IMG/VR virus record: IMGVR_UViG_3300026097_000876
Span: 197,807 to 261,806 of that record
DNA: 64,000 nucleotides
Strand: one strand, 5' to 3'
Both the position numbers and the translations under genes were made by a program. Shown here piece by piece: positions 45,938-64,000 of the stretch. The notes beneath the pieces are model-generated. The model saw nothing but the letters and a program-made list of their open reading frames with translations, was not told the origin of the DNA and ran no database searches. Every line of letters begins with the position of its first letter. Position 1 is the first letter of the stretch.

Positions 45938-45964
45938 TACATATTTAATAAAGGATTAAACAAT

Positions 45965-50188: not shown

Positions 50189-50461
50189 TTTTAGGAAAGG
50201 ACATGCAAGAACGAAATAGGAAAGCTCTTTTGGATCTTCAAATCCGACTCTTACAATGTTATCTATTTTATTTTCGCTAGTAACTCCTACGCTTTTACTA
50301 AGAAAATATCTTTTTTTAAGATTAGCTTCTATCCATTTTTCTAATGCTTTTTCTATATTATATGTGTAAGCTAAGTCAATAGTTTCAAGGTGGGGAGGCT
50401 GATGAGAAAGCCTCCTTATCTTAAATAAATTTTCTGGTGTAGTAGCAGACTTAATTGACAT
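50180..50461 (-). CDS. Hypothetical protein (93 aa, MSIKSATT...)
   Basis: The ATG at 50461 overlaps the VWA gene stop; the longer ORF call 50180..50611 lies inside the VWA gene. Confidence 0.55.
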   Translation of the reverse strand: MSIKSATTPENLFKIRRLSHQPPHLETIDLAYTYNIEKALEKWIEANLKKRYFLSKSVGVTSENKIDNIVRVGFEDPKELSYFVLACPFLKYK

Positions 50462-51767: not shown

Positions 51768-51799
51768 ATTGCACCTTATTTGTTAATTTCTATAGTATA

Positions 51800-51828
51800 A
51801 CTATAACAGTATTTACAGAGTAAGTCAA
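51800..51828 (-). promoter_or_regulatory. sigma70-type promoter TTGACT-N17-TATAGT
   Basis: -35 at 51823-51828, -10 at 51800-51805. Confidence 0.65.
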
Positions 51829-51833
51829 GAGAT

Positions 51834-51854
51834 TAAGGGGCATTATGCCCCTTA
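51834..51854 (-). terminator. GC-rich hairpin just after the MoxR stop (possible terminator or processing site)
   Basis: TAAGGGGCAT-N-ATGCCCCTTA perfect inverted repeat; the U-tract is weak. Confidence 0.45.
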
Positions 51855-51855
51855 G

Positions 51856-52944
51856 TTATGCACTTTGTGCTGCTTGGATATACTTGCCAAACCGCTCGTG
51901 GAATTCATCAAAACATTCAATGGAGTCCGGATCAATAGGCAATGAGTATTGCGTAAGAGCAAGTTTAATGCCCATCACTACAAGCTCTGTATCAAAATTG
52001 TCCATAGCAAAACGCAAGAAGTTATTTACTTTGTTATCAAACTTCTTGTCATCTTTATCACAAGCATCTTTTAACTCGTAGCATAGCGATACTGTCAACG
52101 AGTACAATGCACTAATTTCTTTAGTCTTAATATCTTTGACTTTGCCGTTTAAAATATCTGTTGGATTAGGGAGTTTGCTAGCAACTTTTCGATGTGCCAT
52201 GAACTTAACAGCAAGTCCTTCGCCAACAGCACCGCTAACAAGATCAGTTGTAGTACTTTCGTCATCGTCGTCCTCTAACAACTCTGATACAAAAGACCAC
52301 GAACGAGGCGTTGCAAAGCTACGACTTGGACTCTTAGGATCAAAATCATACAAGTCTTTCTTACTAAACTGAAGAAAACCTACAACATCTTTGTGAATAC
52401 TGTTTTTAACAGCCCATTCAAACCAATCATCGAAACTAACTTCCATTTCCAAGTGTACAAAGCGATTAGCCAACGGAGCAGGCATACGATATGTAACACC
52501 TTTGTCAGCTTCTCTGTTACCTGCGGCAACAATAAGCACATTGTCTGGTAACTCGTATGTACCAACTTTGCGATTAAGAATAAGCTGATATGCCGCCGCC
52601 TGTACAGCAGGAGCCGCTGAGTTCATTTCGTCTAAGAACAATACAATGTTGTCGTACTTAGCAGCCATTTCTGCACTAGGCAGTTCACTTGGCGCAGCCC
52701 AAACCATAGTACTTGAGTTGCTATCAAAGTAAGGAATACCTTTAATGTCTGTAGGCTCCCATAAACTCAAACGAATATCAATTAACAAACTGTTTTCAAG
52801 ACTTTTTGTAATCTGATCAACAATTTCAGACTTACCAATACCCGGAGCACCCCAAAGAAACAGCGGACGCTTCTTTTTAAAAGCTCGGACAATACTCTTT
52901 TTTGCATTATTAGGACTTACAGTACGTAGTGCAATATTTTCCAT
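51856..52944 (-). CDS. MoxR-like AAA+ ATPase
   Basis: GAPGIGKS; LFLDEMN; AAGN; PLANRF; TPRSW. Confidence 0.85.
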   Translation of the reverse strand: MENIALRTVSPNNAKKSIVRAFKKKRPLFLWGAPGIGKSEIVDQITKSLENSLLIDIRLSLWEPTDIKGIPYFDSNSSTMVWAAPSELPSAEMAAKYDNIVLFLDEMNSAAPAVQAAAYQLILNRKVGTYELPDNVLIVAAGNREADKGVTYRMPAPLANRFVHLEMEVSFDDWFEWAVKNSIHKDVVGFLQFSKKDLYDFDPKSPSRSFATPRSWSFVSELLEDDDDESTTTDLVSGAVGEGLAVKFMAHRKVASKLPNPTDILNGKVKDIKTKEISALYSLTVSLCYELKDACDKDDKKFDNKVNNFLRFAMDNFDTELVVMGIKLALTQYSLPIDPDSIECFDEFHERFGKYIQAAQSA

Positions 52945-52994
52945 TATGTATTCCTTGTAGTTTGCTAATGAAAGTTATTTCTAACTATGAATAC

Positions 52995-53022
52995 AGTATA
53001 GCACCACAGTATAAAAAGTCAA
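52995..53022 (-). promoter_or_regulatory. sigma70-type promoter TTGACT-N16-TATACT with TGn extension
   Basis: -35 at 53017-53022, -10 at 52995-53000. Confidence 0.65.
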
Positions 53023-53039
53023 CCTCTTTGTGCGAAAAT

Positions 53040-53435
53040 TTATTCTTCTTCATCTTCTTCATGTCTTGCAATAGCTTTGTTAAGTCCATACTTGCGTAAA
53101 TCGCCACTAAACAAATGTAATTCCATTGCCTTTTTTTCATCTGTTACAAAGATACTGTGATTGGTCAAATAGTAAGGGCATGTAATAAATTTATCTAAAA
53201 AAATAATAGTCTGTGTAGTCATCTTAAAATCTTTAGGAAAAGGAACTTCGTAGGTTTGTAAGTCCAAATTATCTGTGATAAATTCAAATCCTTGATCAGT
53301 TAACCTAAGACCGCCTTCGGATTTTTCTCTAGTATTTTGCCACCATACTGGCAAGTATTGTTTTAGTGTAGAGTTACTAACAGCAATGTTTGATTGTTTA
53401 AGAAAGATCTTGGTATAGGTCTCTTTCCAGTTCAT
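53040..53435 (-). CDS. Hypothetical protein
   Basis: 131 aa, ATGA overlap. Confidence 0.6.
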   Translation of the reverse strand: MNWKETYTKIFLKQSNIAVSNSTLKQYLPVWWQNTREKSEGGLRLTDQGFEFITDNLDLQTYEVPFPKDFKMTTQTIIFLDKFITCPYYLTNHSIFVTDEKKAMELHLFSGDLRKYGLNKAIARHEEDEEE

Positions 53436-53722
53436 TCTTCTCTCACAACTTCCCCGTCAGTTAATTTGTACACAGCAAATTCATCTGACTTAAATGTTTC
53501 GTTTAATTTTTTTGCTAAGTTGTGAGCATGTCCTGGATTACTAAAACTTACTTTTTTATATTTAGGTCCGGGATAGTTTGTAAGAGCGTTAGATGTTTTT
53601 AAATTAAAAGGCTTTCCTTGATAGAATACAGCCCATATTGCATCTGCTAGTAATACTTGCTCTGATTTGTATGTTGATTTGTCGATATTTTCTAAAATAA
53701 TCGTTGGTTTTGGACGACTCAT
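53432..53722 (-). CDS. Hypothetical protein
   Basis: 96 aa, SD AAAGGA. Confidence 0.65.
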   Translation of the reverse strand: MSRPKPTIILENIDKSTYKSEQVLLADAIWAVFYQGKPFNLKTSNALTNYPGPKYKKVSFSNPGHAHNLAKKLNETFKSDEFAVYKLTDGEVVREE

Positions 53723-53760
53723 ATACGTAATTCCTTTAAGTTAACTACGTATATATTTAT
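53720..53760 (-). promoter_or_regulatory. Late promoter ATAAATA followed by an RBS/start-occluding hairpin
   Basis: ATAAATA at 53754-53760; 12-bp stem (one G-U) 53743-53754/53721-53732; 10-nt loop ending AAAGG; the 3' arm includes AT of the ATG. Confidence 0.6.
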
Positions 53761-53784
53761 CTTTTTTAGCTAAAAACTGCTAAG

Positions 53785-54030
53785 TTATTTCCACCCAGAG
53801 CCGCCGTCCATGCTAATAGTGACCACTTCTTCACTATTGGATTTGTTATCAACAATTAATTTTTCTAGACGTCCTTGCTGATTTGCCATTACTGTAGACA
53901 GTGCATACACAAGTGCTTTTGCCTGTGATAAAGGAAGTTTAACTTCTTTTTGATTGCTAGAGTCGGCTGTTTTTACAATTTGTATAAATTGTTGAATTGG
54001 AATAGTATTAATCGGTTCGTTTGTTTGCAT
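53785..54030 (-). CDS. Hypothetical protein
   Basis: 81-aa ORF. Confidence 0.6.
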   Translation of the reverse strand: MQTNEPINTIPIQQFIQIVKTADSSNQKEVKLPLSQAKALVYALSTVMANQQGRLEKLIVDNKSNSEEVVTISMDGGSGWK

Positions 54031-54484
54031 TGCTCAACTCCTGACGCATAGTAAAGTCTGTCTTGAAAGGGCCTTTATGGTCATATTTCTCAAGTGTTGC
54101 TAACTTGGGGCAAAAACTTCTTACCCAACCTTTATCAAATTTAATAATATAATATCCTGCACAGTATAAACTCTTAGATTTTTTGCTCTTTGTAAAAAGA
54201 GGCAACTTTTTTTGTACATTATACATAACATTATACGGTGTAGAAGAAGTAGCAAATCCGTGAATATTTTTTTCTCGATCGCTGTCGTCAGAAATACTAG
54301 TTTTATCCCAGTTAACATCTCCTATAAACGATCTAAAAGACTTTGTATCATTAAAATACTCAGTACCGGATGAACAATGATACATGTATCTTTTGTCTTC
54401 TTCTTTCGAGAGCGTACCGATTCGTTCTCCGTCTGATTCAATAATCCAAAATTTATTTTTTAAAATTGGCTTTGCATTAATCAT
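54008..54484 (-). CDS. Hypothetical protein
   Basis: 158 aa, TAATG-coupled to rnh. Confidence 0.6.
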   Translation of the reverse strand: MINAKPILKNKFWIIESDGERIGTLSKEEDKRYMYHCSSGTEYFNDTKSFRSFIGDVNWDKTSISDDSDREKNIHGFATSSTPYNVMYNVQKKLPLFTKSKKSKSLYCAGYYIIKFDKGWVRSFCPKLATLEKYDHKGPFKTDFTMRQELSNANKRTD

Positions 54485-55476
54485 TATATCTCCTTAGGAT
54501 ATTTTGCATTAAGTGCCTCAGCATAAGGCTGTATATTATCTGAAATTCTTTGCATGTCATGTTTAGCACAAAATTTCATTAGGCGCAATCCTACTTGTGA
54601 TACTTCCTTAGGTTTTGCACGTTCTGCAATAGTGTTATTAATTATCTCTCTAATGTCATCAGGTTGTGCTGTAAGGTCACAAAGTGTTACATTGCGTGTG
54701 TAATCATCTAACACACGATGTTCGACACCTTCGTGATCAATCCAACGCTGCAGCATCATGTTATTCCAGTTGTAACCTTTTGTGCCTTTGTCTTCAAACG
54801 CTTCGATAAGACCAACTTTATTCTTAGTACCTTTCTTGCGTACACCAGGATAAGCACTGAACACATTATCACTAGTGTCGCCACGCATACACTTTTCAAA
54901 CAACATAAACGCAGGATCAGGTGCAGGCTTAGGTTCTTTAGTTTTCTTGTCAATTACTTCTGAACCGTCATCGTTAAAGTAACCTTCGTGTGTGATAGTT
55001 ACATTACTAACACCGTTGTATTGTTTTACATTAGGTGCTACTAGCTGTGCAAAGTCGCCGTCTGTTGAAATAATAACATGATTGTCATTAGGGTGCGACT
55101 GTACCCAGCCTGCAATCAAATCATCTGCTTCTAACTGTTTGTGCTGTAGTACAGTACAATTAGTTTTTTCACTTACAAAGTCTTTAAACTCATCAAATGT
55201 CTGCCAAAAGATTTCGTCTTCTTCTTGTTCGCGTTGTGTAAGTGCATCTCGTGCTACTTGTCGATTGCGTTTGTAGGGTTCGTAATAGTCTTTACGCCAA
55301 CTACGACCTTCTAAACAAAACACAACATGAGTGCCATTAAAGTCTGTCCACGCTTTTTTAATACTGTTAAGAGTAATATGAAAAGCCATACCTACTTTAG
55401 TATCAATGTCGCCACGCACAACATGTCGAGCTCTAAAAAAAGTGTTAGCTGTGTCTATTAAGATATAAGTATTCAT
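54484..55476 (-). CDS. rnh: T4 RNase H-like 5'-3' exonuclease (FEN1 family)
   Basis: LIDTAN; EGRSWRK; LEADDLIA; ISTDGDFAQL; GDTSDNV. Confidence 0.85.
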   Translation of the reverse strand: MNTYILIDTANTFFRARHVVRGDIDTKVGMAFHITLNSIKKAWTDFNGTHVVFCLEGRSWRKDYYEPYKRNRQVARDALTQREQEEDEIFWQTFDEFKDFVSEKTNCTVLQHKQLEADDLIAGWVQSHPNDNHVIISTDGDFAQLVAPNVKQYNGVSNVTITHEGYFNDDGSEVIDKKTKEPKPAPDPAFMLFEKCMRGDTSDNVFSAYPGVRKKGTKNKVGLIEAFEDKGTKGYNWNNMMLQRWIDHEGVEHRVLDDYTRNVTLCDLTAQPDDIREIINNTIAERAKPKEVSQVGLRLMKFCAKHDMQRISDNIQPYAEALNAKYPKEI

Positions 55477-55509
55477 TCGTCCTCACTGACATAAGTCTTC
55501 ATACTTAAT

Positions 55510-55538
55510 AGTATATTGCCTATGTGTGCTTTTGTCAA
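55510..55538 (-). promoter_or_regulatory. sigma70-type promoter TTGACA-N17-TATACT
   Basis: -35 at 55533-55538, -10 at 55510-55515. Confidence 0.7.
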
Positions 55539-55577
55539 ATTTAAATAATGGAATGTAACCAAATAGTTTTTTAAATA

Positions 55578-55967
55578 TCATGATACCTCACTCTTGCCGT
55601 CGTCTAGTTTATCTGTTTTAATGTAACCTCGACCCCTGTCTGTGTCAAGACCGTCGTCCTCTAGCATCTGTCCAACAATTGTTTTAAACCAAGCATCTAC
55701 AATTTGTTCTTGACTCTCACCTTGATACCCTACATCCATAAGTTGTTCAATAAACTCATTATTCCAATCAAGTTCAAAGAAGCCGTTACGAATGTTTTCA
55801 GGATTAATCTGTGTGTCAAGTACAGCTACCCACGGTTCGCCTGCTTCAGTAGCCGCCGCCTTTTCTGCGTCTAGTGCTTCGCGACGTAGATCTTCTGAAG
55901 TCTTTACTTCTTCAGTAGTTTGTTCTTTCTCTTTCTTACCAATTAATCGTTTAAACCATTCACTCAT
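55578..55967 (-). CDS. Hypothetical acidic protein
   Basis: 129 aa, SD GGAGG. Confidence 0.65.
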   Translation of the reverse strand: MSEWFKRLIGKKEKEQTTEEVKTSEDLRREALDAEKAAATEAGEPWVAVLDTQINPENIRNGFFELDWNNEFIEQLMDVGYQGESQEQIVDAWFKTIVGQMLEDDGLDTDRGRGYIKTDKLDDGKSEVS

Positions 55968-56071
55968 AATCCTGCCTCCCTAGCTCGTTGTTCTAAATCT
56001 AAATCGGGTTTTTTAATCGGAGCCTTCATAGCACGTTTGTGTTGCTCATTTTTGTAGTATTCACTTGGCAT
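55964..56071 (-). CDS. Possible 35-aa peptide (MPSEYYK...REAGL)
   Basis: Fills the gap between queE and the next gene with an ATGA overlap; SD spacing is poor. Confidence 0.3.
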   Translation of the reverse strand: MPSEYYKNEQHKRAMKAPIKKPDLDLEQRAREAGL

Positions 56072-56078
56072 ACCTCTA

Positions 56079-56972
56079 CTATGTTCCCCAGGCATTTCCG
56101 AATAAGCTGATGTGGAGTCTTGGCGTAAATCTCCAGCCCCGTTCCATACACGCTTCTGCAACGTCTTTAACATTGAGACTGTACTCTTCCGAACGTCCGC
56201 CAAGCGGCATAAGATATACTGGACACTCAATGCCTCGATCACGGTATGCTTGAACAGCTCTAGTGACTTCATCAAAGTCGTCTTCACTAGCGACAACAAA
56301 CTTGAGATACATGTCGCTACCGTTAACACTATCATACTGACTAGCAACATCAGGCAATATAGCAGTTTCCCAAGGTTCTCCGCTAACACTAAGTTTCGGG
56401 GAGCAACTCCAAGTAACTTCAAATCTGTCTTGAGTGTTGAGATACTCGTAGAAATCATCGTGTAACTTTTGTGTAGTGTTTGTTTCAAATGTAACATTTT
56501 TTAAATCCTTCATACGTGGATGCTCAAACAGTTCTACGTAAAGTCGTTGCCACGCTAACAACGGCTCACCACCTGTGAGGATAAGATGTACATCTTGTCC
56601 ATTATCCATTGTCCACTTGCCCTCTGGAGTAAGACTCAGCAAATGTTCAACTACTTCGTCAACTTCTGCCTGACGATTAAAGTGTTTAAACTCAGGATAG
56701 ATACTAGCATATGTGTCACAGCCTGTGTGGATAATAGGCAAGTCTTCAAACTTTTCTGTGGTCTTGTGTACATCTTTTGCAATTAAATCTGCAACTTCTG
56801 CGTTGTATCTTTGTCCTTCTGCGTGTAACTCTGTGCGATTCTTCTTAGTATCAACACCAAAGTTCATACAACGGAAGTTACAACCGAATGTGCGCAGGAA
56901 TACACTAGGTACTCCTACGAACTTGCCTTCACCTTGCACTGAATAAAACGCTTCACTATAGCGTAGTTTCAT
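56079..56972 (-). CDS. queE: 7-carboxy-7-deazaguanine synthase (radical SAM)
   Basis: EAFYSVQGEG..VG.PSVFLRTFGCNFRC...GCDT; LTGGEP; FETN; CSPKL; PRLH. Confidence 0.85.
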   Translation of the reverse strand: MKLRYSEAFYSVQGEGKFVGVPSVFLRTFGCNFRCMNFGVDTKKNRTELHAEGQRYNAEVADLIAKDVHKTTEKFEDLPIIHTGCDTYASIYPEFKHFNRQAEVDEVVEHLLSLTPEGKWTMDNGQDVHLILTGGEPLLAWQRLYVELFEHPRMKDLKNVTFETNTTQKLHDDFYEYLNTQDRFEVTWSCSPKLSVSGEPWETAILPDVASQYDSVNGSDMYLKFVVASEDDFDEVTRAVQAYRDRGIECPVYLMPLGGRSEEYSLNVKDVAEACMERGWRFTPRLHISLFGNAWGT

Positions 56973-57162
56973 CAACAATCTCCCAATAGAACACTTCTTT
57001 ACCTGTACGTTCTTCTACAGCAGGCAGTGCAATATACTTGTCGGTGACTTCTGTTCTGCCAACATACTGCCAAGTGTGTCCTGCGTTCTGACGCTCTTCT
57101 ACCATTTCTAAAAATTCAGCATTATCTGCGGCAAACAATGCAATAAATACCATCCAAATCAT
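56956..57162 (-). CDS. Small protein with hydrophobic N-terminus
   Basis: 68 aa, MIWMVFIALFAA. Confidence 0.5.
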   Translation of the reverse strand: MIWMVFIALFAADNAEFLEMVEERQNAGHTWQYVGRTEVTDKYIALPAVEERTGKEVFYWEIVDETTL

Positions 57163-57290
57163 TATCTTTGTCTCTTCCTTTCTGCTGTAGGTTTGTGTTC
57201 AGCTTCCGTAATATGCGAAACTATCATGTTTGCTAACGGAGTCTGTTTATCTCTTTTTTTAGGTTTAAACATTTTAGTTAAAAACTTCAT
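57162..57290 (-). CDS. Small basic protein (42 aa), not in the ORF track
   Basis: MKFLTKMFKPKKRDKQ...RKRQR; its TAA overlaps the next ATG; GAGG upstream. Confidence 0.45.
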   Translation of the reverse strand: MKFLTKMFKPKKRDKQTPLANMIVSHITEAEHKPTAERKRQR

Positions 57291-57303
57291 TCTGCAACCT
57301 CTT

Positions 57304-57741
57304 TTATCGGTTAAATCTTACTGTGTATTCACGATTGTTATCCCAAAAAGTAACAGTTGAATGACTGTAAACCCTAACCTGTTCTTCTTCATAGCGTGTT
57401 TCACGCTGACATTGTGTTCTAGTGCCACCTTGTGCGTCTGAGTTTTGGTTGCCAATAATGCCACCTAACACTCCGCCAATCTTTGCACCATCTTTGTGGT
57501 CAATTTGATGTCCTACTACGCCACCAATGATTGTACCAACAATAGTGTCAGCAGTTTTATCACCACTCACGGCAACATCCTTGCATACTTCGACAGTATA
57601 CGGACGTTGTTTAATCACAGTTTTGTAGTGGTCCTCTGTAACACCCATTACGTTATTAGAATCAGCAAATGCTACACTTGCTAAGAAACTTGTGCCTACA
57701 GCAATTGCCACTGTGTGGAAATATAATTCTTTAAACTTCAT
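57304..57741 (-). CDS. Exported glycine-zipper protein
   Basis: Signal-like N-terminus; GTIIGGVVG...GGVLGGIIG. Confidence 0.7.
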   Translation of the reverse strand: MKFKELYFHTVAIAVGTSFLASVAFADSNNVMGVTEDHYKTVIKQRPYTVEVCKDVAVSGDKTADTIVGTIIGGVVGHQIDHKDGAKIGGVLGGIIGNQNSDAQGGTRTQCQRETRYEEEQVRVYSHSTVTFWDNNREYTVRFNR

Positions 57742-58127
57742 GCTTCTTCCTCAATATACCTTAAAAGTTCTTTGTCTTCAACATCACCAGGGATGTCGTT
57801 TTTATAAAAAATTCTATAACTGTCGGAACCATATTTGCCAATGCCGCATAAATCGTTGGCATCCTTTTTGTCCCAGTTAATATATTGTAAACTCATTTTC
57901 CAAATACGTCTAGCCCTAACATTCTGCATGCCCAATGGCTTCAGCACTTCGGCAATCTCATCAACCGTTGCATACAGCAAATAGCCTGCTGTAGGCCACC
58001 GTTCAAAAAACTCTGTGAGCACAGGCTTGGTCTGACGCCTATCAACTTGGTTAAGGCAGATCACACCTACCATGTGTTGCCACTCGCATTCAACCTGTTG
58101 TTGCACCATCAAATCATCACGCATCAT
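57738..58127 (-). CDS. MBD4-like HhH-GPD DNA glycosylase domain
   Basis: W...V.VICLNQ; LKPLGM...RA; LCGIGKYGSDSYRIF; DKEL..Y. Confidence 0.75.
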   Translation of the reverse strand: MMRDDLMVQQQVECEWQHMVGVICLNQVDRRQTKPVLTEFFERWPTAGYLLYATVDEIAEVLKPLGMQNVRARRIWKMSLQYINWDKKDANDLCGIGKYGSDSYRIFYKNDIPGDVEDKELLRYIEEEA

Positions 58128-58225
58128 AGTATAAAATCCTGTACAAATCCTACTACACCTAGTAATAGAGCACAAACGATCAATCCTTTTGCCATATATA
58201 CAGCAACAATATCTAAATCATTCAT
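58124..58225 (-). CDS. 33-aa membrane peptide, not in the ORF track
   Basis: MNDLDIVAVYMAKGLIVCALLLGVVGFVQDFIL; ATGA overlaps at both ends. Confidence 0.55.
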   Translation of the reverse strand: MNDLDIVAVYMAKGLIVCALLLGVVGFVQDFIL

Positions 58226-58908
58226 CGTGGAGCAAACTCCTGTTGTAGTTTAATGTTGTCAAAGAACTCTTTCTTTGTGCCTGCATCATCTTTAAAAGCA
58301 CCTTTTAGCACACTGGTCTGTGTAAGACTGCTATGTGCCATAATGCCTCTGTTTTCGCAACAACCGTGTGTTGCTTGAATGTACACACCTAAGTGTTCAG
58401 CACCAGTTGCATATGCAATCTCACGTGCAATGTCATTTGCAAGTTCTTCTTGCAGTGTGCCACGTCGAGCGCACCACTGTGCAATACGTGTGTACTTGCT
58501 AAGTCCAATAAGTTTGTCTGCGGCAATAATACCAATGTACGCTACGCCGGCAACCGGCTGATGGTGGTGACTGCAAACACTGCGCAGTTCGCTACGCACT
58601 ACTAGCATACCATCATAGCGGTCTTCACTGTCATTAGGAAATGCCGTAGCCTCAGGACGATAATCATAACGTCCAGCCATCAGTTCATTGAAGTACATTT
58701 TAGCCAGTCTGCGAGCTGTGCCGTGACTGTTGGGATCAGTTTCTCTGTCAATGACCAGTGCGTCAAGCACTGTTTCAAATGCTTCAGTGGCTTCGTCGAT
58801 CAGTTGTTCTTTTTCGCCACTCTGTATTATTCGAGCAATGTTATCGCCTGCCCAGTAGCGTTTGTCTGCGGCTTTGCAACGTTGTGCGATTTCTTCATAT
58901 TTTTTCAT
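58222..58908 (-). CDS. folE: GTP cyclohydrolase I
   Basis: DPNS.GTARRLAKM; SVCSHH; GLSK..R; LQEE; HGCCENRG. Confidence 0.92.
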   Translation of the reverse strand: MKKYEEIAQRCKAADKRYWAGDNIARIIQSGEKEQLIDEATEAFETVLDALVIDRETDPNSHGTARRLAKMYFNELMAGRYDYRPEATAFPNDSEDRYDGMLVVRSELRSVCSHHHQPVAGVAYIGIIAADKLIGLSKYTRIAQWCARRGTLQEELANDIAREIAYATGAEHLGVYIQATHGCCENRGIMAHSSLTQTSVLKGAFKDDAGTKKEFFDNIKLQQEFAPR

Positions 58909-58947
58909 TTTTTCTCCGAGTTAAAGACGTGGATGTCTTATTGTTTT

Positions 58948-58976
58948 ATTATATGATATATTTAGGTTTTTGTCAA
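58948..58976 (-). promoter_or_regulatory. Consensus sigma70 promoter TTGACA-N17-TATAAT for folE
   Basis: -35 at 58971-58976 (inside the last codons of the upstream gene), -10 at 58948-58953. Confidence 0.85.
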
Positions 58977-59783
58977 GTTTTTTATGTAATTAAAATAATC
59001 TTTAGCAATTAATTCATGTATTTCTTTAGTATAGTGTTCACCGTCTAGTCTATGTTGATCTGTTTCAATATCTATACCTTTAGAATGCTTTAAAAAACCT
59101 TCTGCTGATATTTTTGATTTGATACCTGCTTCAAATTCTCCATACATTTCAATATTTTTTGGAACAAAAACTCTATTATTAATAGTCCATTGATACCATT
59201 TTATATTCCTTCTAGAACACATAGTATCAATGGCTAATAGATCTAAACAATAATCTTTATATTGCAAAGGCGAAACTAATTCGTGCCACAATTTAGTATA
59301 GATATACTTTTCATGAAACGGCTTCCAATCTGCTTTAACTTCCATGTCATCAAATTCGAAACCTTTAAAGTCTTCGTAATTTTCTGGCCGAACCTGATCA
59401 ATCATTTCGATATAATTTTCGGTCACTCGATGATCAGTGTATCTATCTACTAAATTGTCTTTTAACTGATCATCATCTAAATATAAGTCAACACCAGTAT
59501 CTTCCCCGATGTCTAAATGTCGAGAGCAAGAAAGCAAAAATCTATTCCAGTAAGTAGATTGTATAAACACCTCGTCGATGTCATCATAGCGATTAAGAAC
59601 GGATTTTACCCAGGCAGGGTATTTTCGATTACATCCGCCTGGCTGACTATAAATTACAACTTTTTTATTATGATGTTTTGCATAAATTTCAGCATAGTTA
59701 TTGTCTTGCCATGCAGATATATTACCATTAACTTCGTAATATCCGTGAGCGTGACTGTCGCCTATGAATAATGTTCTGCCCAT
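58962..59783 (-). CDS. SGNH/GDSL-like hypothetical protein
   Basis: LFIGDSH block I; C-terminal DGEHY. Confidence 0.5.
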   Translation of the reverse strand: MGRTLFIGDSHAHGYYEVNGNISAWQDNNYAEIYAKHHNKKVVIYSQPGGCNRKYPAWVKSVLNRYDDIDEVFIQSTYWNRFLLSCSRHLDIGEDTGVDLYLDDDQLKDNLVDRYTDHRVTENYIEMIDQVRPENYEDFKGFEFDDMEVKADWKPFHEKYIYTKLWHELVSPLQYKDYCLDLLAIDTMCSRRNIKWYQWTINNRVFVPKNIEMYGEFEAGIKSKISAEGFLKHSKGIDIETDQHRLDGEHYTKEIHELIAKDYFNYIKNLTKT

Positions 59784-59986
59784 TATGACTTAAAGTATTT
59801 TTCTACCATTTCCAACATATCATCATATTCTGCAATCTGTTTAACTTCGTGTTCGATTGCTTCGATAATGTCCGAATGTTCTCCAATACCTGCTGGATTG
59901 TGCAAGTATACTTCTACATTTGCACGATGTTTTTCAATATGTCCTTTTGCGTGTGACACAAACGCTTCTAGTAATTGTTCTCTCAT
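59783..59986 (-). CDS. Small hypothetical protein of a type seen in T4-like phages
   Basis: 67 aa, H.ANVEVYL.NP.GIGEH. Confidence 0.6.
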   Translation of the reverse strand: MREQLLEAFVSHAKGHIEKHRANVEVYLHNPAGIGEHSDIIEAIEHEVKQIAEYDDMLEMVEKYFKS

Positions 59987-59998
59987 TGTATTTCCTTT

Positions 59999-60397
59999 CT
60001 AACAACCATCGCCGTATATTATATCAGCAATATCTTCAGTATTTAGACAATCTTTTTTGTAATTTCCTTTTTCTGGAATCACATGTCTTACACCACCTCG
60101 TGGATCTTTCATATCATCTTTACGTCTAGGAATAAGATGCACATGTGGATACATCACAGTCTGTCCAGCTTCTTCGCCGATATTCTGGCCGATATTATAA
60201 GCATCGCAGTATCCACCTTGTACCCAATCGTATCCCCAAGCATATGCTGCTTTATAGCACTTTGCTAAGGATTCCCAGTCTTGTACTTTAGGAACAAAAA
60301 GAACGTGTCCTTCTGTAACGGGATATCCGTCTTTAAATACAGTGTAGTCTCTAGTATCGAGCACTACGTCTGTCCAAGGTACTTCGTTAAATTCCAT
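59999..60397 (-). CDS. HIT-family nucleotide hydrolase
   Basis: DGYPVTEGHVLFVP; YNIGQN...AGQTVMYPHVHLIPR. Confidence 0.85.
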   Translation of the reverse strand: MEFNEVPWTDVVLDTRDYTVFKDGYPVTEGHVLFVPKVQDWESLAKCYKAAYAWGYDWVQGGYCDAYNIGQNIGEEAGQTVMYPHVHLIPRRKDDMKDPRGGVRHVIPEKGNYKKDCLNTEDIADIIYGDGC

Positions 60398-60968
60398 AAT
60401 TAAATGCCACCGTAATTCTTTCTTTATCTACCATTTGTTGATCTACCTTATGCCAAAGATAACTGGGGAAAATTAATAATGATCCTGTTTCTACCGCACA
60501 GACTAGCGTAGGAGTATTTGACTCGCTTAATTGCGTAACACGACTTCTAGGCCAATTTGATTTTTGATTACCGTTTACTAGTGTGAGTCCAGGATGATCT
60601 TGATCTGCCTGTACATAGTAAACACCACTCCATATGTCTGGTAAGTGATTGTGTTCTTCGTGATATGTATATTTTCTATTAATACTAAACCAACTGTCTC
60701 CTAAAATTGGCGTGCCAGCTAGGTTAGTCTCTTTATGACATTCCTGCACACAATTTTCAATAAACATTTTTAGATCGTTTAATAAGGGATCGTTTAGAAT
60801 TTTATGACTCACACCAAACGAAGTATATCCGTTTGCACTGTATTTTACTGGCGACTGATCACTTTTTTTCTCTTGCAAGAAATTCTGGAACCATCTTTTT
60901 TTGTAGTTCTTCGGCATTATCATACATTGTACGAAAAACTTGCGTTGGAAATATATATTGCTTCTCAA
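60387..60968 (-). CDS. 2OG-Fe(II) oxygenase-like protein (TIGR02466-type)
   Basis: HNH...WSGVYYV; IFPSYLWHKV; RITVAFN. Confidence 0.75.
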   Translation of the reverse strand: MRSNIYFQRKFFVQCMIMPKNYKKRWFQNFLQEKKSDQSPVKYSANGYTSFGVSHKILNDPLLNDLKMFIENCVQECHKETNLAGTPILGDSWFSINRKYTYHEEHNHLPDIWSGVYYVQADQDHPGLTLVNGNQKSNWPRSRVTQLSESNTPTLVCAVETGSLLIFPSYLWHKVDQQMVDKERITVAFNYGI

Positions 60969-61516
60969 TCATAATTGCCAACATTCTCCCACGGATATAC
61001 TAACCAAACATCATCTTCGGCTTTGTTAAGTTCGTGAACTGTATAGTCCACTCTGCCATTAAACTCGCTTGCTAAGTTATCTGTTAGTGTAGCAAAGCGA
61101 ACATTGTTGTGCCAAATCTTTCCCCATTTAGGATCATTAGGCAAGCATGTACTTTGCCAATCTTGCATGATCCAGTTAAACGTAGAACCAGTGTCGTTGA
61201 TGTCGTCTACAATAAGAATTTTCTTTTCTAATGGACCGCCAGTAATTTTATCTTCATCTTTACTTACATATCCAAATGCATCTTCGGACATCCAACAGTT
61301 GCTTTCACTGCCGTGGCCACTGTCGTCTCGCAGGCTTACTTTAAGTGCTTCGCAACGAATGCCAGTCATATTGCTAATAATAGTAGCAGGAACATTACCA
61401 CCACGGGTAATACCTACAATATAATCAGGACGCCAATTGTCAGCATACATTTGATTAACAATATTCACGCACATTGTTTCTACATCTTGCCAGGTATAAT
61501 AATGCTTATTGACCAT
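60965..61516 (-). CDS. Type I phosphoribosyltransferase (Gpt-like)
   Basis: IVGITRGG; ILIVDDINDTGST PRPP loop; WLVYPWE. Confidence 0.85.
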   Translation of the reverse strand: MVNKHYYTWQDVETMCVNIVNQMYADNWRPDYIVGITRGGNVPATIISNMTGIRCEALKVSLRDDSGHGSESNCWMSEDAFGYVSKDEDKITGGPLEKKILIVDDINDTGSTFNWIMQDWQSTCLPNDPKWGKIWHNNVRFATLTDNLASEFNGRVDYTVHELNKAEDDVWLVYPWENVGNYD

Positions 61517-61721
61517 TTTTCTTTTCCTTTAGTTTAGGATGAATTTGTTTGTCATTATAAATGTCGCCAGCCAATGCTTGAATTTGATCTACAAGATGTG
61601 TAACACGATCGAAATCATATTCTTCGCCAGGTGCTTTTTTATATTTTTCTCTATGTGCTAACACAGTAAGTTCGTGTATAGCACTGACTTTATCCATTAG
61701 TTGTTGAATTGTGTGCTGCAT
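61506..61721 (-). CDS. Hypothetical protein
   Basis: 71 aa, overlapping its neighbours. Confidence 0.55.
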   Translation of the reverse strand: MQHTIQQLMDKVSAIHELTVLAHREKYKKAPGEEYDFDRVTHLVDQIQALAGDIYNDKQIHPKLKEKKNGQ

Positions 61722-62151
61722 TATATTTTTCCTCTAAGTATGTGTGATTGTCAATCCATTCACCGTCTTTGATAAATCCCCATTCTCTCAGTTTAGGTCC
61801 GGGGATAAAAATAGTCCAAGTGTCAACACCAGGCTCAAGATCAATACGATGCAGACTGTGAGCACCAGATATTCTAAAATGTCCAGGCCTTCTCCAAAAC
61901 ACTCCTTTTGGAGTAGTTTCCCAGTAACCGCCACGCAGAATAAGAGCAAAGTAAGGCCAAGGATGATCGTGTAAGTCATCTAAATCTCCTTTGTGAAAGT
62001 TGTGCAGAAAGACGTTAAACGGAAACCATTTGCGATCTTTCAAGAACAAATAGTATCGAGTAAGATATGGCTCGTTGCAATAACGATCCATAATCACACG
62101 CTTTCTGCCTATGCTGTCTAACCAGTTTAATAAATTAAAACGGAATGTCAT
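61690..62151 (-). CDS. Cupin-like hypothetical protein
   Basis: LHDHPW...GGYWE...HRI; start uncertain. Confidence 0.55.
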   Translation of the reverse strand: MTFRFNLLNWLDSIGRKRVIMDRYCNEPYLTRYYLFLKDRKWFPFNVFLHNFHKGDLDDLHDHPWPYFALILRGGYWETTPKGVFWRRPGHFRISGAHSLHRIDLEPGVDTWTIFIPGPKLREWGFIKDGEWIDNHTYLEEKYNAAHNSTTNG

Positions 62152-62485
62152 CGTCTAGCTCTCCAGCTTGTTTCTTGCCCTTGTAGTCTTGTTTGACCAT
62201 ATCGTATACGCTTTTAAAATTACGCCAAGTTTTTTCCAGTGCTGGATACTCTTTACACATACGTTCAATTTCATCTTTATCGATGAGAGTGCTTTCATAC
62301 TCCCAAAACGGTTTAGTAAGGGTAATACTCGATACGTCAATAGTGTCACTTAAATCAGTAACAGTAAATGCATCGCCGTGTGTAAAAGTAATATCATCTA
62401 CAGTATCTATATATGATGTAGTTGTACCATATGTGTCATCTAAGTTGATAGTGATAGTATCATCATTATCCTTTGATTGTGTCAT
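62135..62485 (-). CDS. Hypothetical acidic protein ending DDIPF
   Basis: ATG at 62485; D/T-rich N-terminus; the C-terminal DDIPF resembles SSB-type partner-binding tails. Confidence 0.55.
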   Translation of the reverse strand: MTQSKDNDDTITINLDDTYGTTTSYIDTVDDITFTHGDAFTVTDLSDTIDVSSITLTKPFWEYESTLIDKDEIERMCKEYPALEKTWRNFKSVYDMVKQDYKGKKQAGELDDDIPF

Positions 62486-63521
62486 ACAGAGCTTCTCCAC
62501 TAAAAAAAAGTTTGTTTAATTTTTTATTTTGTTTCTCCATCAAAATATAATAATAATTATTATAGTTTTCCATATAGTCTACAATTTGTTTTTTTAGACT
62601 TTCTTTATGAGTTTGATATTGATCAAAATTCTTTGTCCATATACTAGGATATTTAAATTCTTGTAGAGCCATTTCTGAGTAGCTCAATCGATCTGGCACC
62701 ATAGGAATAGCACCCACTAGTGCACCTTCATACCAGCTAATGCCAAGCGTTTCTTGCAAATTAGCTGAAAACACAAGTTTAGCCTCACCTAATAAATTAT
62801 GATATTCATTTTTAGTAAGTTCTTGCTCTTGACACACAACAAATTCATATTGCGGAAGTTCTTGTTTTAGATCACGAAAAATTTCTATTTGTTTTTCTGG
62901 AGCAATACGATGCGGGAATAAGATAAGATCACGTTTTTCCATACCACTGTATGTTACCAAACGGTCCTTTAGATATTCCATAGGCCAGCCAACCTTCTTA
63001 ATCTTAGAATAATCAATTTGATTTTTATTAAAAATTCTTTTAAAAAGATCTATATGAAATTGTGTAGCAAAGAAATTATCATCATAGCATTCGTACATGC
63101 TACGTTCAGCATGCCTTACCCAAGGCTTATCTCCAATCAAACGACCGAGGAAATCATGCGGGTCATAACTACCAGCATGCCAAAGACCGCCAACTCTAAT
63201 GTCGACCCCAAGTAGTTCAGCCATGTAACGTAACTGTATAACAGTCGGATTCCAAGCATCCGTATATAGGAAATAATCCCCATTTTTAATGTCTCCTTTG
63301 CAAAACATTTCACCAATCTGTTCGAGCTGTTTGCTCTTGTACACATTAGTTCCACCGAAGTTAAGGAAAGCCCCAGGCGTAGTTGCCTGAGGCGTTTCCC
63401 CGCCACTAATTACAATAACATCTGTATTTGTAGCATGTTGCAATTGTTTAGGAAGATAGTCCTTCCATTGTTTAGTGTAGCGAGTATCAACTGCTTCAAT
63501 GTCTACAATATAGATTGTCAT
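62466..63521 (-). CDS. GT-B glycosyltransferase-like protein
   Basis: WHAGSYDP; FPHRIAPEKQ; QETLGISWYEGALVGAIP.VPDRLSYSE (Ex7E-like). Confidence 0.7.
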   Translation of the reverse strand: MTIYIVDIEAVDTRYTKQWKDYLPKQLQHATNTDVIVISGGETPQATTPGAFLNFGGTNVYKSKQLEQIGEMFCKGDIKNGDYFLYTDAWNPTVIQLRYMAELLGVDIRVGGLWHAGSYDPHDFLGRLIGDKPWVRHAERSMYECYDDNFFATQFHIDLFKRIFNKNQIDYSKIKKVGWPMEYLKDRLVTYSGMEKRDLILFPHRIAPEKQIEIFRDLKQELPQYEFVVCQEQELTKNEYHNLLGEAKLVFSANLQETLGISWYEGALVGAIPMVPDRLSYSEMALQEFKYPSIWTKNFDQYQTHKESLKKQIVDYMENYNNYYYILMEKQNKKLNKLFFSGEALYDTIKG

Positions 63522-63772
63522 TAACTTCTCCGATTGTTTTGATAACGACCGTTATTGTTATTGTTATTATTGTTATTATTATGCCGGCGCTTACCTCCGT
63601 TACGAAAACGTTGATATGCTTGCCAGGCACGGCTTTTACTATTGTATAGATTTCGCTCGTCCCATTCATATCCGTTATGACCGTAAAGCCACGCGGTTGA
63701 ACAGAAATATTTAAAACGCTCAAGCTCTTCGAATACTTTATTATAAGCTTCACGATTAAATTGAATTGCCAT
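63521..63772 (-). CDS. Hypothetical protein with Asn/Arg-rich tail
   Basis: 83 aa, TAATG-coupled to the glycosyltransferase. Confidence 0.6.
   Translation of the reverse strand: MAIQFNREAYNKVFEELERFKYFCSTAWLYGHNGYEWDERNLYNSKSRAWQAYQRFRNGGKRRHNNNNNNNNNNGRYQNNRRS
63551..63580 (-). repeat. AAT/AAC trinucleotide run encoding 10 Asn
   Basis: Ten consecutive Asn codons, mixed AAT and AAC. Confidence 0.85.
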
Positions 63773-63788
63773 ACTATTATTTTCCTTG

Positions 63789-64000
63789 TTAATTTTTAGG
63801 ATAAAAGATTAAACAGCCATTTTCGTTATCTTCAGCTACGCTGATCTCTACAAAGCGGCCGGGATACTTTGTAGAAATTTCTTGATACAAGTCATCTGCG
63901 ATCATTTCGCAGCTCTTGTGATCTAAATAGAGCACTGGAGTCGAACTGTCGACTTCAGCATAGAGTCTTTCCATCCATCGCTTGAACTGGATGAATTCGA
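63789..64000 (-). CDS. QueD/DpdL-like T-fold protein, 5'-truncated
   Basis: The frame is open to the window edge: EFIQFKRWMERLY...SCEMIADDL...VAEDNENG; it lies in the folE/queE region. Confidence 0.6.
   Translation of the reverse strand, partial: EFIQFKRWMERLYAEVDSSTPVLYLDHKSCEMIADDLYQEISTKYPGRFVEISVAEDNENGCLIFYPKN

What the first reader, a model, noticed from the sequence alone, without database searches (positions are those of the whole stretch)
56079..64000. 7-deazaguanine cluster with a DpdL/QueD-like gene, glycosyltransferase, PRTase and HIT hydrolase but no visible DpdA or QueC
Seen: queE, folE and a truncated T-fold gene (EFIQFKRW...SCEMIADDL), interleaved with a GT-B protein, Gpt-like PRTase, HIT, 2OG oxygenase, cupin and SGNH-like genes. 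Established: FolE-QueD-QueE make CDG; DpdL is a QueD-like predicted CDG decarboxylase; described phage deazaguanines are inserted by DpdA transglycosylases. Inference: either dpdA lies outside the window, or base salvage by the PRTase feeds a replicative route; the linked glycosyltransferase could yield a glycosylated deazaguanine not yet described.
Basis: partly seen in the sequence, partly recalled or inferred. Interest (0 to 1): 0.7.

Follow-up and report, generated by a model that had tools for sequence, protein, structure and literature searches.

The report
Marine jumbo-phage 7-deazaguanine DNA-modification cluster
The end of this phage contig carries genes for replacing guanine in the phage's DNA with a 7-deazaguanine base; the 'missing' insertion enzyme (DpdA) lies just past the contig end, and a sugar-adding enzyme travels with these genes in several unrelated phage groups, which hints at a modified DNA base that has not been described.

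Summary
The genes are real. On the minus strand lie queE, folE, a GT-B/GT4 glycosyltransferase, a 6-oxopurine-type PRTase, HIT, a 2OG oxygenase, a cupin, and the 3' third of a DpdL gene cut off by the contig end. No DpdA or QueC lies in the window or the 262-kb contig.

A 100%-identical public contig continues past the window. It gives the full DpdL, with the LxxxHRHxF signature. About 1.3 kb beyond the window end it carries a 515-aa protein with the TGT catalytic motifs (GDSGGFQ, FDCASP) and a TGT fold. This is a long DpdA2-like transglycosylase.

QueC is absent from this lineage. QueD lies about 50 kb away in relatives.

Across 23 related marine contigs the fixed core is DpdA–172aa–DpdL–GT4–PRTase–FolE–QueE. 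HIT, cupin, 2OG and the 273-aa gene are variable.

The DpdA2-like/DpdL/GT4 trio recurs in Acidovorax ACP17, Pseudomonas PA5oct (guanine modified, identity unknown), Sinorhizobium Phosso and Synechococcus BUCT-ZZ01. The PRTase occurs elsewhere only in DpdL phages, including the fully dDG-substituted Cellulophaga phiST.

Most likely this is post-replicative insertion of 7-deazaguanine. The glycosyltransferase step is inferred and unproven.

The parts
63789..64000 (-). 3' part (last 69 codons plus stop) of dpdL, a QueD-like predicted CDG decarboxylase. The 5' part is cut off by the contig end.
   Evidence: The full 154-aa gene is on the 100%-identical contig L084:9269-9733 and carries LGYPHRHIF. 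It is 31% identical to phiST CGPG_00067 (DpdL), E 3e-14. PHROG 17812, E 8e-31. 45 of 100 Atlas feature neighbours are PTPS clusters.
63521..63772 (-). 83-aa ORF with a run of 10 Asn, function unknown. It is a variable gene.
   Evidence: Present in 13/23 relatives. No family hit.
62466..63521 (-). GT-B fold, GT4-like (retaining-type) glycosyltransferase. It is a conserved partner of DpdL and DpdA.
   Evidence: AF2 pLDDT 95.8. Foldseek hits are glycogen synthase, BshA, GlgM, PimB' and MshA, E 6e-10, and Swiss-Prot GT4 enzymes. E257-x7-E265 and R205/K210 are conserved across 50 diverse homologues. Present in 23/23 relatives.
62135..62485 (-). 116-aa ORF, function unknown.
   Evidence: Present in 21/23 relatives. 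Weak HMM match to PA5oct EST35_0319.
61690..62151 (-). Cupin-like protein (accessory).
   Evidence: PHROG 4786 'cysteine dioxygenase', E 1.5e-34. Present in 15/23 relatives.
61506..61721 (-). 71-aa ORF, function unknown (accessory).
   Evidence: Present in 4/23 relatives.
60965..61516 (-). Type I phosphoribosyltransferase of the 6-oxopurine kind (core gene).
   Evidence: PF00156, E 1.5e-11. Nearest PDB sequences are P. horikoshii and Sulfolobus purine PRTs and yeast HGPRT. Present in 23/23 relatives. Among phage isolates, homologues occur only in the Cellulophaga phiST group and BUCT-ZZ01, plus a divergent PA5oct EST35_0321.
60387..60923 (-). 2OG-Fe(II) oxygenase (accessory).
   Evidence: PF13759, E 5e-21. 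Present in 3/23 relatives.
59999..60397 (-). HIT-family nucleotide hydrolase or transferase (accessory).
   Evidence: PF01230, E 2.6e-9. Present in 16/23 relatives.
58962..59783 (-). 273-aa protein, function unknown.
   Evidence: Best Pfam hit is SGNH at E 0.18. Present in 4/23 relatives.
58222..58908 (-). GTP cyclohydrolase I (FolE).
   Evidence: PF01227, E 1.9e-38. Present in 23/23 relatives.
57738..58127 (-). Small HhH-GPD DNA-glycosylase-like protein (accessory).
   Evidence: PF00730, E 3.5e-7. Present in 9/23 relatives.
57304..57741 (-). Glycine-zipper protein with a hydrophobic N-terminus. It looks like a recent insertion.
   Evidence: PF05433. Present in 0/23 relatives.
56079..56972 (-). 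QueE-like radical-SAM CDG synthase. It has an insertion of about 49 residues between the 2nd and 3rd cluster cysteines.
   Evidence: PHROG 2076, E 3e-52. NCBIfam QueE models hit below cut-off. Alignment. Present in 23/23 relatives.

Best explanation
This is the 3' half of a phage 7-deazaguanine DNA-modification module of the 'DpdL type' (no QueC). It sits in a marine jumbo phage related to the Phosso, Atu_ph07 and Vibrio 2.275.O phages.

Proposed route:
1. FolE turns GTP into H2NTP.
2. A QueD encoded about 50 kb away (or the host's) makes CPH4.
3. The QueE-like radical-SAM enzyme makes 7-carboxy-7-deazaguanine (CDG).
4. DpdL, a QueD paralogue with LxxxHRHxF, converts CDG to 7-deazaguanine. This activity was predicted by others and has not been demonstrated.
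5. A 515-aa DpdA2-like transglycosylase, encoded about 1.3 kb beyond the window end, swaps the base for guanine in finished DNA.

The conserved PRTase most likely recycles the guanine that this exchange releases back to GMP and then GTP, which feeds FolE. The conserved GT4 glycosyltransferase, genetically coupled to DpdL in many lineages, most likely elaborates the base or the DNA with a sugar, or is otherwise needed for the pathway.

Shown: gene identities, folds, motifs, synteny and co-occurrence. Inferred: every chemical step, the PRTase role and the GT role.
For: Gene identities.

Contig continuation: L084 is 100.000% identical to the window over 11,535 bp and extends 9.5 kb further.

DpdL:
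- It carries the motif and is homologous to phiST DpdL.
- It has PTPS-like features.

DpdA:
- D106 in GDSGGFQ and D299 in FDCASP are invariant in 22 homologues.
- These match ILTDSGGFQ and MFDCVMPTRNARNG of E. coli Tgt.
- The AF2 model's top 50 PDB matches are all Z. mobilis TGT, E 4e-7.
- Homology chain to DpdA2: the marine DpdA HMM hits L095_402 at 5e-17; BLASTP links L095_402 to ACP17 ASD50403 at 1.5e-6; the ACP17 protein matches Vibrio nt-1 at 36% identity, at what I take to be nt-1's DpdA2 locus; hhalign of the marine family against the ACP17 protein gives 69% probability.

Pathway context:
- QueC is absent: 0 matches in the own contig and 0 of 5 large related contigs over cut-off.
- QueD is present elsewhere in relatives and is abundant in the group.
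- The core set is fixed in 23/23 spanning loci.
- The trio is conserved in ACP17, PA5oct, Phosso, BUCT-ZZ01 and two distant metagenomic contigs.

Literature:
- phiST has dDG replacing all G and encodes DpdL and DpdA3 (PMC10516641).
- PA5oct DNA resists G-containing restriction sites (PMC12191111).

PRTase: its homologues among 50,697 phage records are restricted to DpdL phages.
Against: - No chemistry was measured for this phage or any close relative.
- DpdL's decarboxylase activity is only a published prediction. ACP17 dpdL plus dpdA gave no dDG in E. coli (PMC10516641).
- The 515-aa protein has no Pfam, PHROG, NCBIfam or PDB sequence hit. Its model is only of moderate confidence (pLDDT 73, TM about 0.5).
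- 7-deazaguanine itself offers no obvious hydroxyl for a glycosyltransferase, so the GT's acceptor is unexplained.
- QueD was not found in the window's own contig, which is 73% complete.
- The guanine-recycling role of the PRTase is pure inference.
Confidence: 0.78

Rival explanations
1. Replicative route. The PRTase converts the free deazapurine (DG or CDG) with PRPP to a nucleotide. Host or phage kinases and ribonucleotide reductase then make 7-deaza-dGTP, and the phage polymerase incorporates it. DpdA would be secondary or would serve as a proof-reader.
For: - The PRTase is core (23/23).
- Among isolates it occurs only in DpdL phages, including phiST, whose G is 100% replaced (PMC10516641).
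- It is adjacent to QueE in BUCT-ZZ01.
- A distant GT-family contig carries a PRTase and a NUDIX gene side by side.
- From memory: PRTases act on CDG or preQ0 in tubercidin and toyocamycin biosynthesis, and 7-deaza-dGTP is a good polymerase substrate.
Against: - A DpdA is present and universally conserved next to DpdL, so there is no gap to fill.
- No homologue of phiST's MazG-like dNTPase was found in the contig or in L084.
- The nearest solved relatives are ordinary 6-oxopurine salvage enzymes.
- ACP17, Phosso and the Xanthomonas phages have the trio without this PRTase.
Confidence: 0.15
2. The glycosyltransferase (and the upstream sugar-nucleotide genes) have nothing to do with the deazaguanine base. 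They would glycosylate something else, such as the virion, the host envelope or a protein. The linkage to DpdL would then be inherited gene order.
For: - GT4 enzymes typically act on small molecules, lipids or glycans.
- DG has no obvious acceptor group.
- phiST makes dDG without any such GT.
- The complex prediction gave no verdict, so it adds nothing either way.
Against: - The GT abuts DpdL, often with overlapping stop and start codons and in both gene orders. This holds in lineages that share little else: ACP17, Phosso, BUCT-ZZ01, PA5oct and metagenomic L095 and L097.
- 29-38%-identical GT family members still sit beside DpdL, DpdA-like, FolE or PTPS genes.
- Among isolates, 18 of 23 records with this GT also have DpdL.
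Confidence: 0.25
3. The module makes a soluble pterin or deazapurine metabolite, for example a pteridine glycoside from FolE, a PTPS-like enzyme and a GT, or it modifies tRNA rather than phage DNA.
For: - From memory only: FolE, a PTPS-family T-fold enzyme and a group-1 glycosyltransferase together resemble the cyanobacterial pteridine-glycoside route.
- One trio-bearing phage infects Synechococcus elongatus.
Against: - QueE and a TGT-family enzyme are fixed members of the module.
- The module is embedded between the DNA polymerase/clamp genes and the FEN/RNase H gene.
- Related DpdL phages have dDG in their DNA (PMC10516641), and PA5oct DNA is restriction-resistant at G sites (PMC12191111).
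Confidence: 0.05

Closest known systems
Cellulophaga phage phiST dDG system (FolE, QueD, QueE, DpdL, DpdA3; Cui et al. 2023, PMC10516641)
   Same: - DpdL homologue with LxxxHRHxF.
- FolE and QueE are present and QueC is absent.
- The genome also carries a homologue of the same PRTase.
   Different: - phiST's transglycosylase is the short 259-aa DpdA3, whose relation to the 515-aa protein is barely detectable.
- phiST has no GT4.
- phiST has a MazG/dUTPase-like gene next to DpdL that is absent here.
DpdA2-like/DpdL/GT4 clusters of Acidovorax phage ACP17, Pseudomonas phage PA5oct (Wroclawvirus), Sinorhizobium phage Phosso and Synechococcus phage BUCT-ZZ01
   Same: - The same trio next to FolE and QueE and the replication genes.
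- PA5oct and BUCT-ZZ01 also share the PRTase and the QueE insertion.
- PA5oct shares the clamp-DpdA-GT-DpdL-...-PRTase-QueE-p129-FEN order.
   Different: - In those records the genes are annotated mostly as hypothetical, and the chemical product is unknown.
- ACP17's DpdA is 424 aa and closer to nt-1 DpdA2.
- The marine group adds the 172-aa gene (shared only with ACP17) and upstream sugar-nucleotide genes.
Vibrio phage nt-1 / KVP40-type DpdA2 systems (Hutinet et al. 2019, PMC6884629)
   Same: A DpdA2-family transglycosylase, reached through the ACP17 protein, and a QueE homologue.
   Different: Those phages encode QueC and an amidotransferase and carry dPreQ0, dADG or dG+ at low levels. They have no DpdL or GT4.
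T4 alpha/beta-glucosyltransferases (DNA glucosyl-hmC)
   Same: A GT-B fold enzyme of about 350 aa in a phage DNA-modification context (from memory).
   Different: They did not appear among the top structural matches, which are all GT4-type enzymes. The acceptor there is a hydroxymethyl group, and no equivalent group is evident on DG.
CDG/preQ0 phosphoribosyltransferases of tubercidin and toyocamycin biosynthesis (TubE, ToyH; from memory)
   Same: A PRTase sits beside FolE, QueD and QueE without QueC being needed.
   Different: The phage enzyme's nearest solved relatives are purine salvage PRTs.

Membership tests
DpdL (QueD-like predicted CDG decarboxylase) | LxxxHRHxF in place of the QueD motif CxxxHGH | tested here: met
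   LGYPHRHIF is in the full-length gene on the 100%-identical contig. The motif is conserved in the 20 marine homologues, and one distant member (L097) has HGH instead. The motif lies outside the window.
DpdL (QueD-like predicted CDG decarboxylase) | Homology to phiST CGPG_00067 | tested here: met
   BLASTP E 3e-14 at 31% identity. HMM E 7.7e-17.
DpdL (QueD-like predicted CDG decarboxylase) | PTPS/QueD T-fold | tested here: inconclusive
   There is no PF01242 hit even at E 5, and hhalign against two QueD sequences is weak. However, 45 of 100 Atlas feature neighbours are PTPS clusters, score 0.94, and the published HHpred for phiST DpdL is 99.9% (PMC10516641).
DpdL (QueD-like predicted CDG decarboxylase) | Genome context of DpdA, FolE and QueE (plus QueD) without QueC | tested here: met
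DpdL (QueD-like predicted CDG decarboxylase) | CDG decarboxylase activity | not testable with these tools
   The activity has not been demonstrated even for phiST or ACP17 DpdL (PMC10516641).
DpdA / TGT transglycosylase (515-aa protein, outside the window) | TGT (beta/alpha)8 fold | tested here: met
   All top 50 Foldseek PDB matches are TGT, E 4e-7, probability 1.00, TM by target about 0.5. The model's pLDDT is 73.
DpdA / TGT transglycosylase (515-aa protein, outside the window) | The two catalytic Asp motifs (DSGGFQ and FDC.xP) | tested here: met
   D106 and D299 are invariant. They match E. coli Tgt ILTDSGGFQ and MFDCVMPTRNARNG. That these residues are the catalytic aspartates is from memory.
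DpdA / TGT transglycosylase (515-aa protein, outside the window) | Match to the Pfam TGT model PF01702 | tested here: not met
   No hit. This is as expected for the DpdA2 and DpdA3 subfamilies, which the papers found only by HHpred.
DpdA / TGT transglycosylase (515-aa protein, outside the window) | Guanine/deazaguanine exchange on DNA | not testable with these tools
   -
QueE (CDG synthase) | Radical-SAM cluster motif and a match to QueE family models | tested here: inconclusive
   PHROG QueE-like E 3e-52. Five NCBIfam QueE equivalogs hit, all far below cut-off. The cysteine motif is split, CNFRC-(49 aa)-CDTY.
GTP cyclohydrolase I (FolE) | Pfam PF01227 above the gathering score | tested here: met
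   132 bits against a cut-off of 27.
GT4-type GT-B glycosyltransferase | Two-Rossmann GT-B fold | tested here: met
GT4-type GT-B glycosyltransferase | EX7E motif and the basic residues that bind the diphosphate | tested here: met
   E257 (at least 90% conserved) and E265 (invariant) are eight residues apart. R205 and K210 are at least 90% conserved. The meaning of the motif is from memory.
GT4-type GT-B glycosyltransferase | Pfam Glycos_transf_1 or Glyco_trans_4 match | tested here: not met
   No hit for this protein. Some Atlas neighbour clusters do carry PF00534.
6-oxopurine phosphoribosyltransferase | Type I PRT domain with a PRPP loop | tested here: met
   PF00156, 44 bits against a cut-off of 26. 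ILIVDDINDTGST aligns to the PRPP loop of solved purine PRTs.
6-oxopurine phosphoribosyltransferase | Base specificity (guanine versus 7-deazaguanine) | not testable with these tools
   -

The most novel reading that the evidence does not exclude
The conserved DpdA2-like/DpdL/GT4 trio, often with the PRTase, may specify a 7-deazaguanine-derived DNA base that has not been described. It would most plausibly be a glycosylated or otherwise GT-dependent derivative. On this reading the GT4 is the 'unknown enzyme' whose absence made ACP17 dpdL plus dpdA inactive in E. coli. The base would be abundant in the sea: this GT family has at least 8,000 90%-identity clusters and 1,226 50%-identity clusters. 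It would also be the unidentified modified G of PA5oct.
Probability: 0.3. Interest if true: 0.85.

Novelty: new variant of a known kind. Interest (0 to 1): 0.6.

Why it matters
Only eight 7-deazaguanine bases are known in DNA. The published dDG route (DpdL plus DpdA) could not be reconstituted for ACP17.

This analysis shows three things:
- The ACP17, PA5oct and marine version always carries a GT4 glycosyltransferase beside DpdL.
- A purine PRTase tracks DpdL phages.
- The module is very common in marine viromes.

That gives concrete, testable candidates for the missing pathway component and for the unidentified modified guanine of PA5oct, a phage that can be grown in the laboratory. It also shows how a contig end produced an apparent 'DpdA-less' cluster. 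This supports the published view that every deazaguanine phage has a DpdA.

Tried and rejected
- PDB sequence searches found nothing. This covered the 515-aa protein alone and as a profile, and the GT.
- Pfam, PHROG and NCBIfam gave no hit for the 515-aa and 172-aa proteins. The 172-aa core protein stays unexplained. Its Atlas features pointed weakly to glycosyl-hydrolase-like fragments (score 0.86, a lead only). It is shared only with ACP17. Phosso's annotated 'glycosylase' is not its homologue.
- Profile comparisons (hhalign) were weak for the DpdA family against phiST DpdA3 (12%) and E. coli Tgt (13%), although the motif-level alignment is sensible.
- Profile comparisons of DpdL against two QueD sequences were also weak.
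- The GT-DpdL complex prediction returned 'no answer'. It is not evidence either way.
I dropped them and did not send them elsewhere.
- The supplementary tables of Cui et al. are not held, so I could not check which ACP17 gene they called dpdA.
- Sequencing runs that hold the locus are kept only as contigs, so no read-level signal of modification could be sought.
- The PP-loop protein at 43168-44022 is not QueC-like.
- No homologue of phiST's MazG-like gene was found.
- Literature searches found no report of a glycosylated deazaguanine in DNA, or of a PRTase role in these pathways.

Full report
**Where the window sits.** The window is the last 64 kb of a 261,806-bp IMG/VR viral contig that CheckV rates 73% complete. 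From about 46 kb to the end, all genes run on the minus strand. The finding's region therefore reads from the contig end inwards.

**What is in the window.**
- QueE-like radical-SAM enzyme, 56079-56972: PHROG 2076 E 3e-52; five NCBIfam QueE models hit below cut-off.
- FolE, 58222-58908: PF01227 E 2e-38.
- Small HhH-GPD protein, 57738-58127.
- HIT protein, 59999-60397.
- 2OG-Fe(II) oxygenase, 60387-60923.
- Type I PRTase, 60965-61516.
- Cupin-like protein, 61690-62151.

The 351-aa protein at 62466-63521 has no Pfam hit. An AlphaFold2 model built on 50 diverse homologues (pLDDT 95.8) is a GT-B fold. It matches GT4-type enzymes: glycogen synthase, BshA, GlgM, PimB' and MshA, with E down to 6e-10. 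An E-x7-E pair (E257, E265) and R205/K210 are conserved.

No TGT, QueC or PTPS model matches anywhere in the contig.

**The truncated gene is DpdL.** ORF 63789-63998 runs off the contig end. The exact GT protein also occurs on an ENA contig of 278,713 bp. That contig is 100.000% identical to window 52466-64000 over 11,535 bp and continues 9.5 kb further. I treat it as the same or a near-identical genome.

On it the gene is 154 aa and reads ...DVSFLGYPHRHIFHF... This is the DpdL signature LxxxHRHxF rather than the QueD motif CxxxHGH. It is 31% identical (E 3e-14) to Cellulophaga phage phiST CGPG_00067, the founding DpdL (PMC10516641). It matches PHROG 17812 end to end. Its Atlas feature neighbours are largely PTPS-bearing clusters. 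Direct Pfam and hhalign links to QueD are weak, so the T-fold assignment rests partly on the published HHpred result.

**DpdA is just outside the window.** On the identical contig, about 1.3 kb beyond the window end, lies a 515-aa gene (L084:7007-8554). A 66-aa DUF465 gene and a 172-aa gene separate it from dpdL. It has no Pfam, PHROG, NCBIfam or PDB sequence hit.

It does contain GDSGGFQ and FDCASPFLATANG. Both aspartates are invariant in 22 homologues. They correspond to ILTDSGGFQ and MFDCVMPTRNARNG of E. coli Tgt. Its AlphaFold2 model (pLDDT 73) has only Z. mobilis tRNA-guanine transglycosylase among its top 50 PDB matches (E 4e-7).

It also links by sequence to DpdA2, in four steps:
1. The marine family's HMM hits a 402-aa metagenomic relative.
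2. BLASTP links that relative to ACP17 ASD50403.
3. hhalign of the marine family against the ACP17 protein gives 69% probability.
4. The ACP17 protein is 33-37% identical to proteins of the Vibrio nt-1/KVP40 group and to Stenotrophomonas phage proteins annotated queuine tRNA-ribosyltransferase. I take these to be the DpdA2 family of PMC6884629.

So it is a long, divergent DpdA2-like enzyme. The cluster is not DpdA-less. The contig merely ends inside it.

**QueC and QueD.** QueC is absent from the contig. It is also absent, above cut-off, from five large related contigs. This fits the DpdL-type pathway.

A PTPS/QueD gene (PF01242, 47.7 bits) lies about 50 kb upstream of the cluster in one related 237-kb contig. 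It has at least 600 close relatives in IMG/VR. One 84-kb contig carries both this QueD and the GT. By position, the window's genome would carry it in the unassembled part. This was not shown.

**What is core and what is accessory.** The GT has 376 confirmed IMG/VR relatives. It also has at least 8,000 90%-identity clusters and 1,226 50%-identity clusters in public data.

In the 23 fetched loci that span polB to FEN, these genes are present in all 23:
- polB
- an RfaE-II-like or TagD-like nucleotidyltransferase
- a clamp-like 248-aa protein
- DpdA
- DUF465
- the 172-aa protein
- DpdL
- GT
- PRTase
- FolE
- QueE
- a 129-aa protein
- FEN

These genes are variable:
- epimerase, 22/23
- the 116-aa ORF, 21/23
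- HAD/PMM-like, 19/23
- HIT, 16/23
- cupin, 15/23
- HhH-GPD, 9/23
- the 273-aa gene, 4/23
- 2OG oxygenase, 3/23
- the glycine-zipper and 68-aa genes, 0/23

**The same module elsewhere.** By polB similarity the phage belongs with the Phosso, Atu_ph07, Vibrio 2.275.O and Rak2-like jumbo phages. The GT sits next to DpdL in several phages:
- Pseudomonas PA5oct: EST35_0316 DpdA-like, 0317 GT, 0318 DpdL, 0321 divergent PRTase, 0322 QueE.
- Acidovorax ACP17: QueD, FolE, 132-aa, 424-aa DpdA2-like, GT, DpdL, QueE.
- Sinorhizobium Phosso.
- Synechococcus BUCT-ZZ01: QueE, PRTase, QueD, FolE, 447-aa, DpdA2-like, DpdL, GT.
- Xanthomonas BUDD and X1, and Burkholderia BCSR5.

Two metagenomic GT family members, at 29% and 38% identity, again abut DpdL and a DpdA-like gene. 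One of them also sits beside PTPS and FolE. DpdL and the GT often share overlapping stop and start codons, and they occur in either order. phiST and its kin have DpdL without this GT.

PA5oct DNA resists restriction enzymes with G in their sites, and its modification is unidentified (PMC12191111). Cui et al. could not obtain dDG from ACP17 dpdL plus dpdA in E. coli. They suggested that another enzyme may be needed (PMC10516641).

**The PRTase.** Its nearest solved relatives are archaeal purine PRTs and yeast HGPRT (E 3e-8). Among 50,697 phage records, tblastn finds it in two places: the five records of phiST, phi13:1 and phi19:2 (phages with dDG), and BUCT-ZZ01. One unannotated 4-kb faecal fragment also matches. 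An HMM adds PA5oct 0321. All the named phages are DpdL phages.

Since DpdA is present, I read the PRTase as a salvage enzyme for the guanine that base exchange releases. That would close a GTP to deazaguanine to guanine to GMP loop. A role in making a deazapurine nucleotide remains possible, and only an assay can decide.

**Mechanism and its limits.** The order FolE, QueD, QueE, DpdL, DpdA follows established and published pathway knowledge, applied to the genes shown here.

The GT's acceptor is the main unexplained point, because 7-deazaguanine has no obvious hydroxyl. The possibilities are:
- glycosylation of a different DpdL or QueE product
- glycosylation of CDG
- glycosylation of an exocyclic nitrogen
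- a non-DNA acceptor

The upstream nucleotidyltransferase, HAD phosphatase or mutase, SDR epimerase and NDP-sugar dehydrogenase genes could supply a donor sugar. They lie outside the window and are absent near the trio in ACP17 and PA5oct. The GT-DpdL complex prediction gave no verdict.

**Verdict.** The replicative-route alternative is no longer needed.

The glycosylated-base idea is unproven, but a strong and previously unremarked GT-DpdL linkage now backs it. I rate this a new variant of a known kind: the DpdL-type deazaguanine system with a DpdA2-like enzyme, a GT4 and a PRTase. Interest is moderate to high because it is abundant and directly testable in PA5oct or ACP17.

Noticed in passing
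window 115-14199 (+), with 14831-16912: A single 4,694-aa ORF whose only Pfam hit is one FG-GAP repeat. A tail-collar-domain protein follows it. This is probably a giant fibre or adhesin.
   Followed up: partly
window 39562-43036 (-): A complete ABC importer inside a phage: SBP_bac_8 binding protein, ABC ATPase and two BPD_transp_1 permeases.
   Followed up: partly
window 34826-39569 and 43168-46567: The transporter is flanked by two B12-binding radical-SAM proteins (38115-39569, 44465-45937). Also nearby are an ATP-grasp protein, a carbamoyltransferase, a PP-loop (NAD-synthase-like, not QueC) protein and another 2OG oxygenase. This may be a second auxiliary metabolic cluster of unknown product.
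   Followed up: partly
window 47904-48899 (-): A protein with an Mtd_N (major tropism determinant N-terminal) domain and a tail-fibre-like C-terminus. It may be the target of a diversity-generating retroelement. No template repeat or reverse transcriptase was looked for.
   Followed up: no
window 57738-58127 (-): The small HhH-GPD protein reads LCGIGKYGSDSYRIFY...VEDKELLRY. From memory this resembles MBD4/Mig-type mismatch glycosylases. It is present in 9/23 relatives, and its position varies. A DNA glycosylase in a phage that replaces G is worth a look.
   Followed up: partly
window 56079-56972 (-): QueE carries an insertion of about 49 residues between the second and third cysteines of the radical-SAM motif (CNFRC...GCDTY). 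PA5oct and BUCT-ZZ01 QueE share it. ACP17 and Phosso QueE do not.
   Followed up: partly
window 56956-57741 (-): A glycine-zipper protein with a hydrophobic N-terminus and a 68-aa ORF lie between folE and queE. They are found in none of the 23 related loci, so this looks like a recent moron-like insertion.
   Followed up: partly
L084:2820-6228 (beyond the window end): Sugar-nucleotide genes lie between polB and the clamp-like gene: an SDR epimerase, an RfaE-II/TagD-like nucleotidyltransferase, a HAD-IIB/PMM-like protein and a truncated NDP-sugar dehydrogenase. The nucleotidyltransferase is core (23/23). They could supply a donor for the GT.
   Followed up: partly
L084:8732-9250 (beyond the window end): A 172-aa core protein between DpdA and DpdL is shared only with ACP17 (upstream of its DpdA) and has no recognisable family.
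   Followed up: partly
window 50451-52944 (-): A MoxR-like AAA ATPase is paired with a DUF2201 metallopeptidase/VWA protein. The pair is conserved in relatives.
   Followed up: no
L097:3335-3733: A distant DpdL-family member next to a GT has HGH (LAQEHGHTF) instead of HRH. It may be an intermediate between the QueD and DpdL signatures.
   Followed up: no
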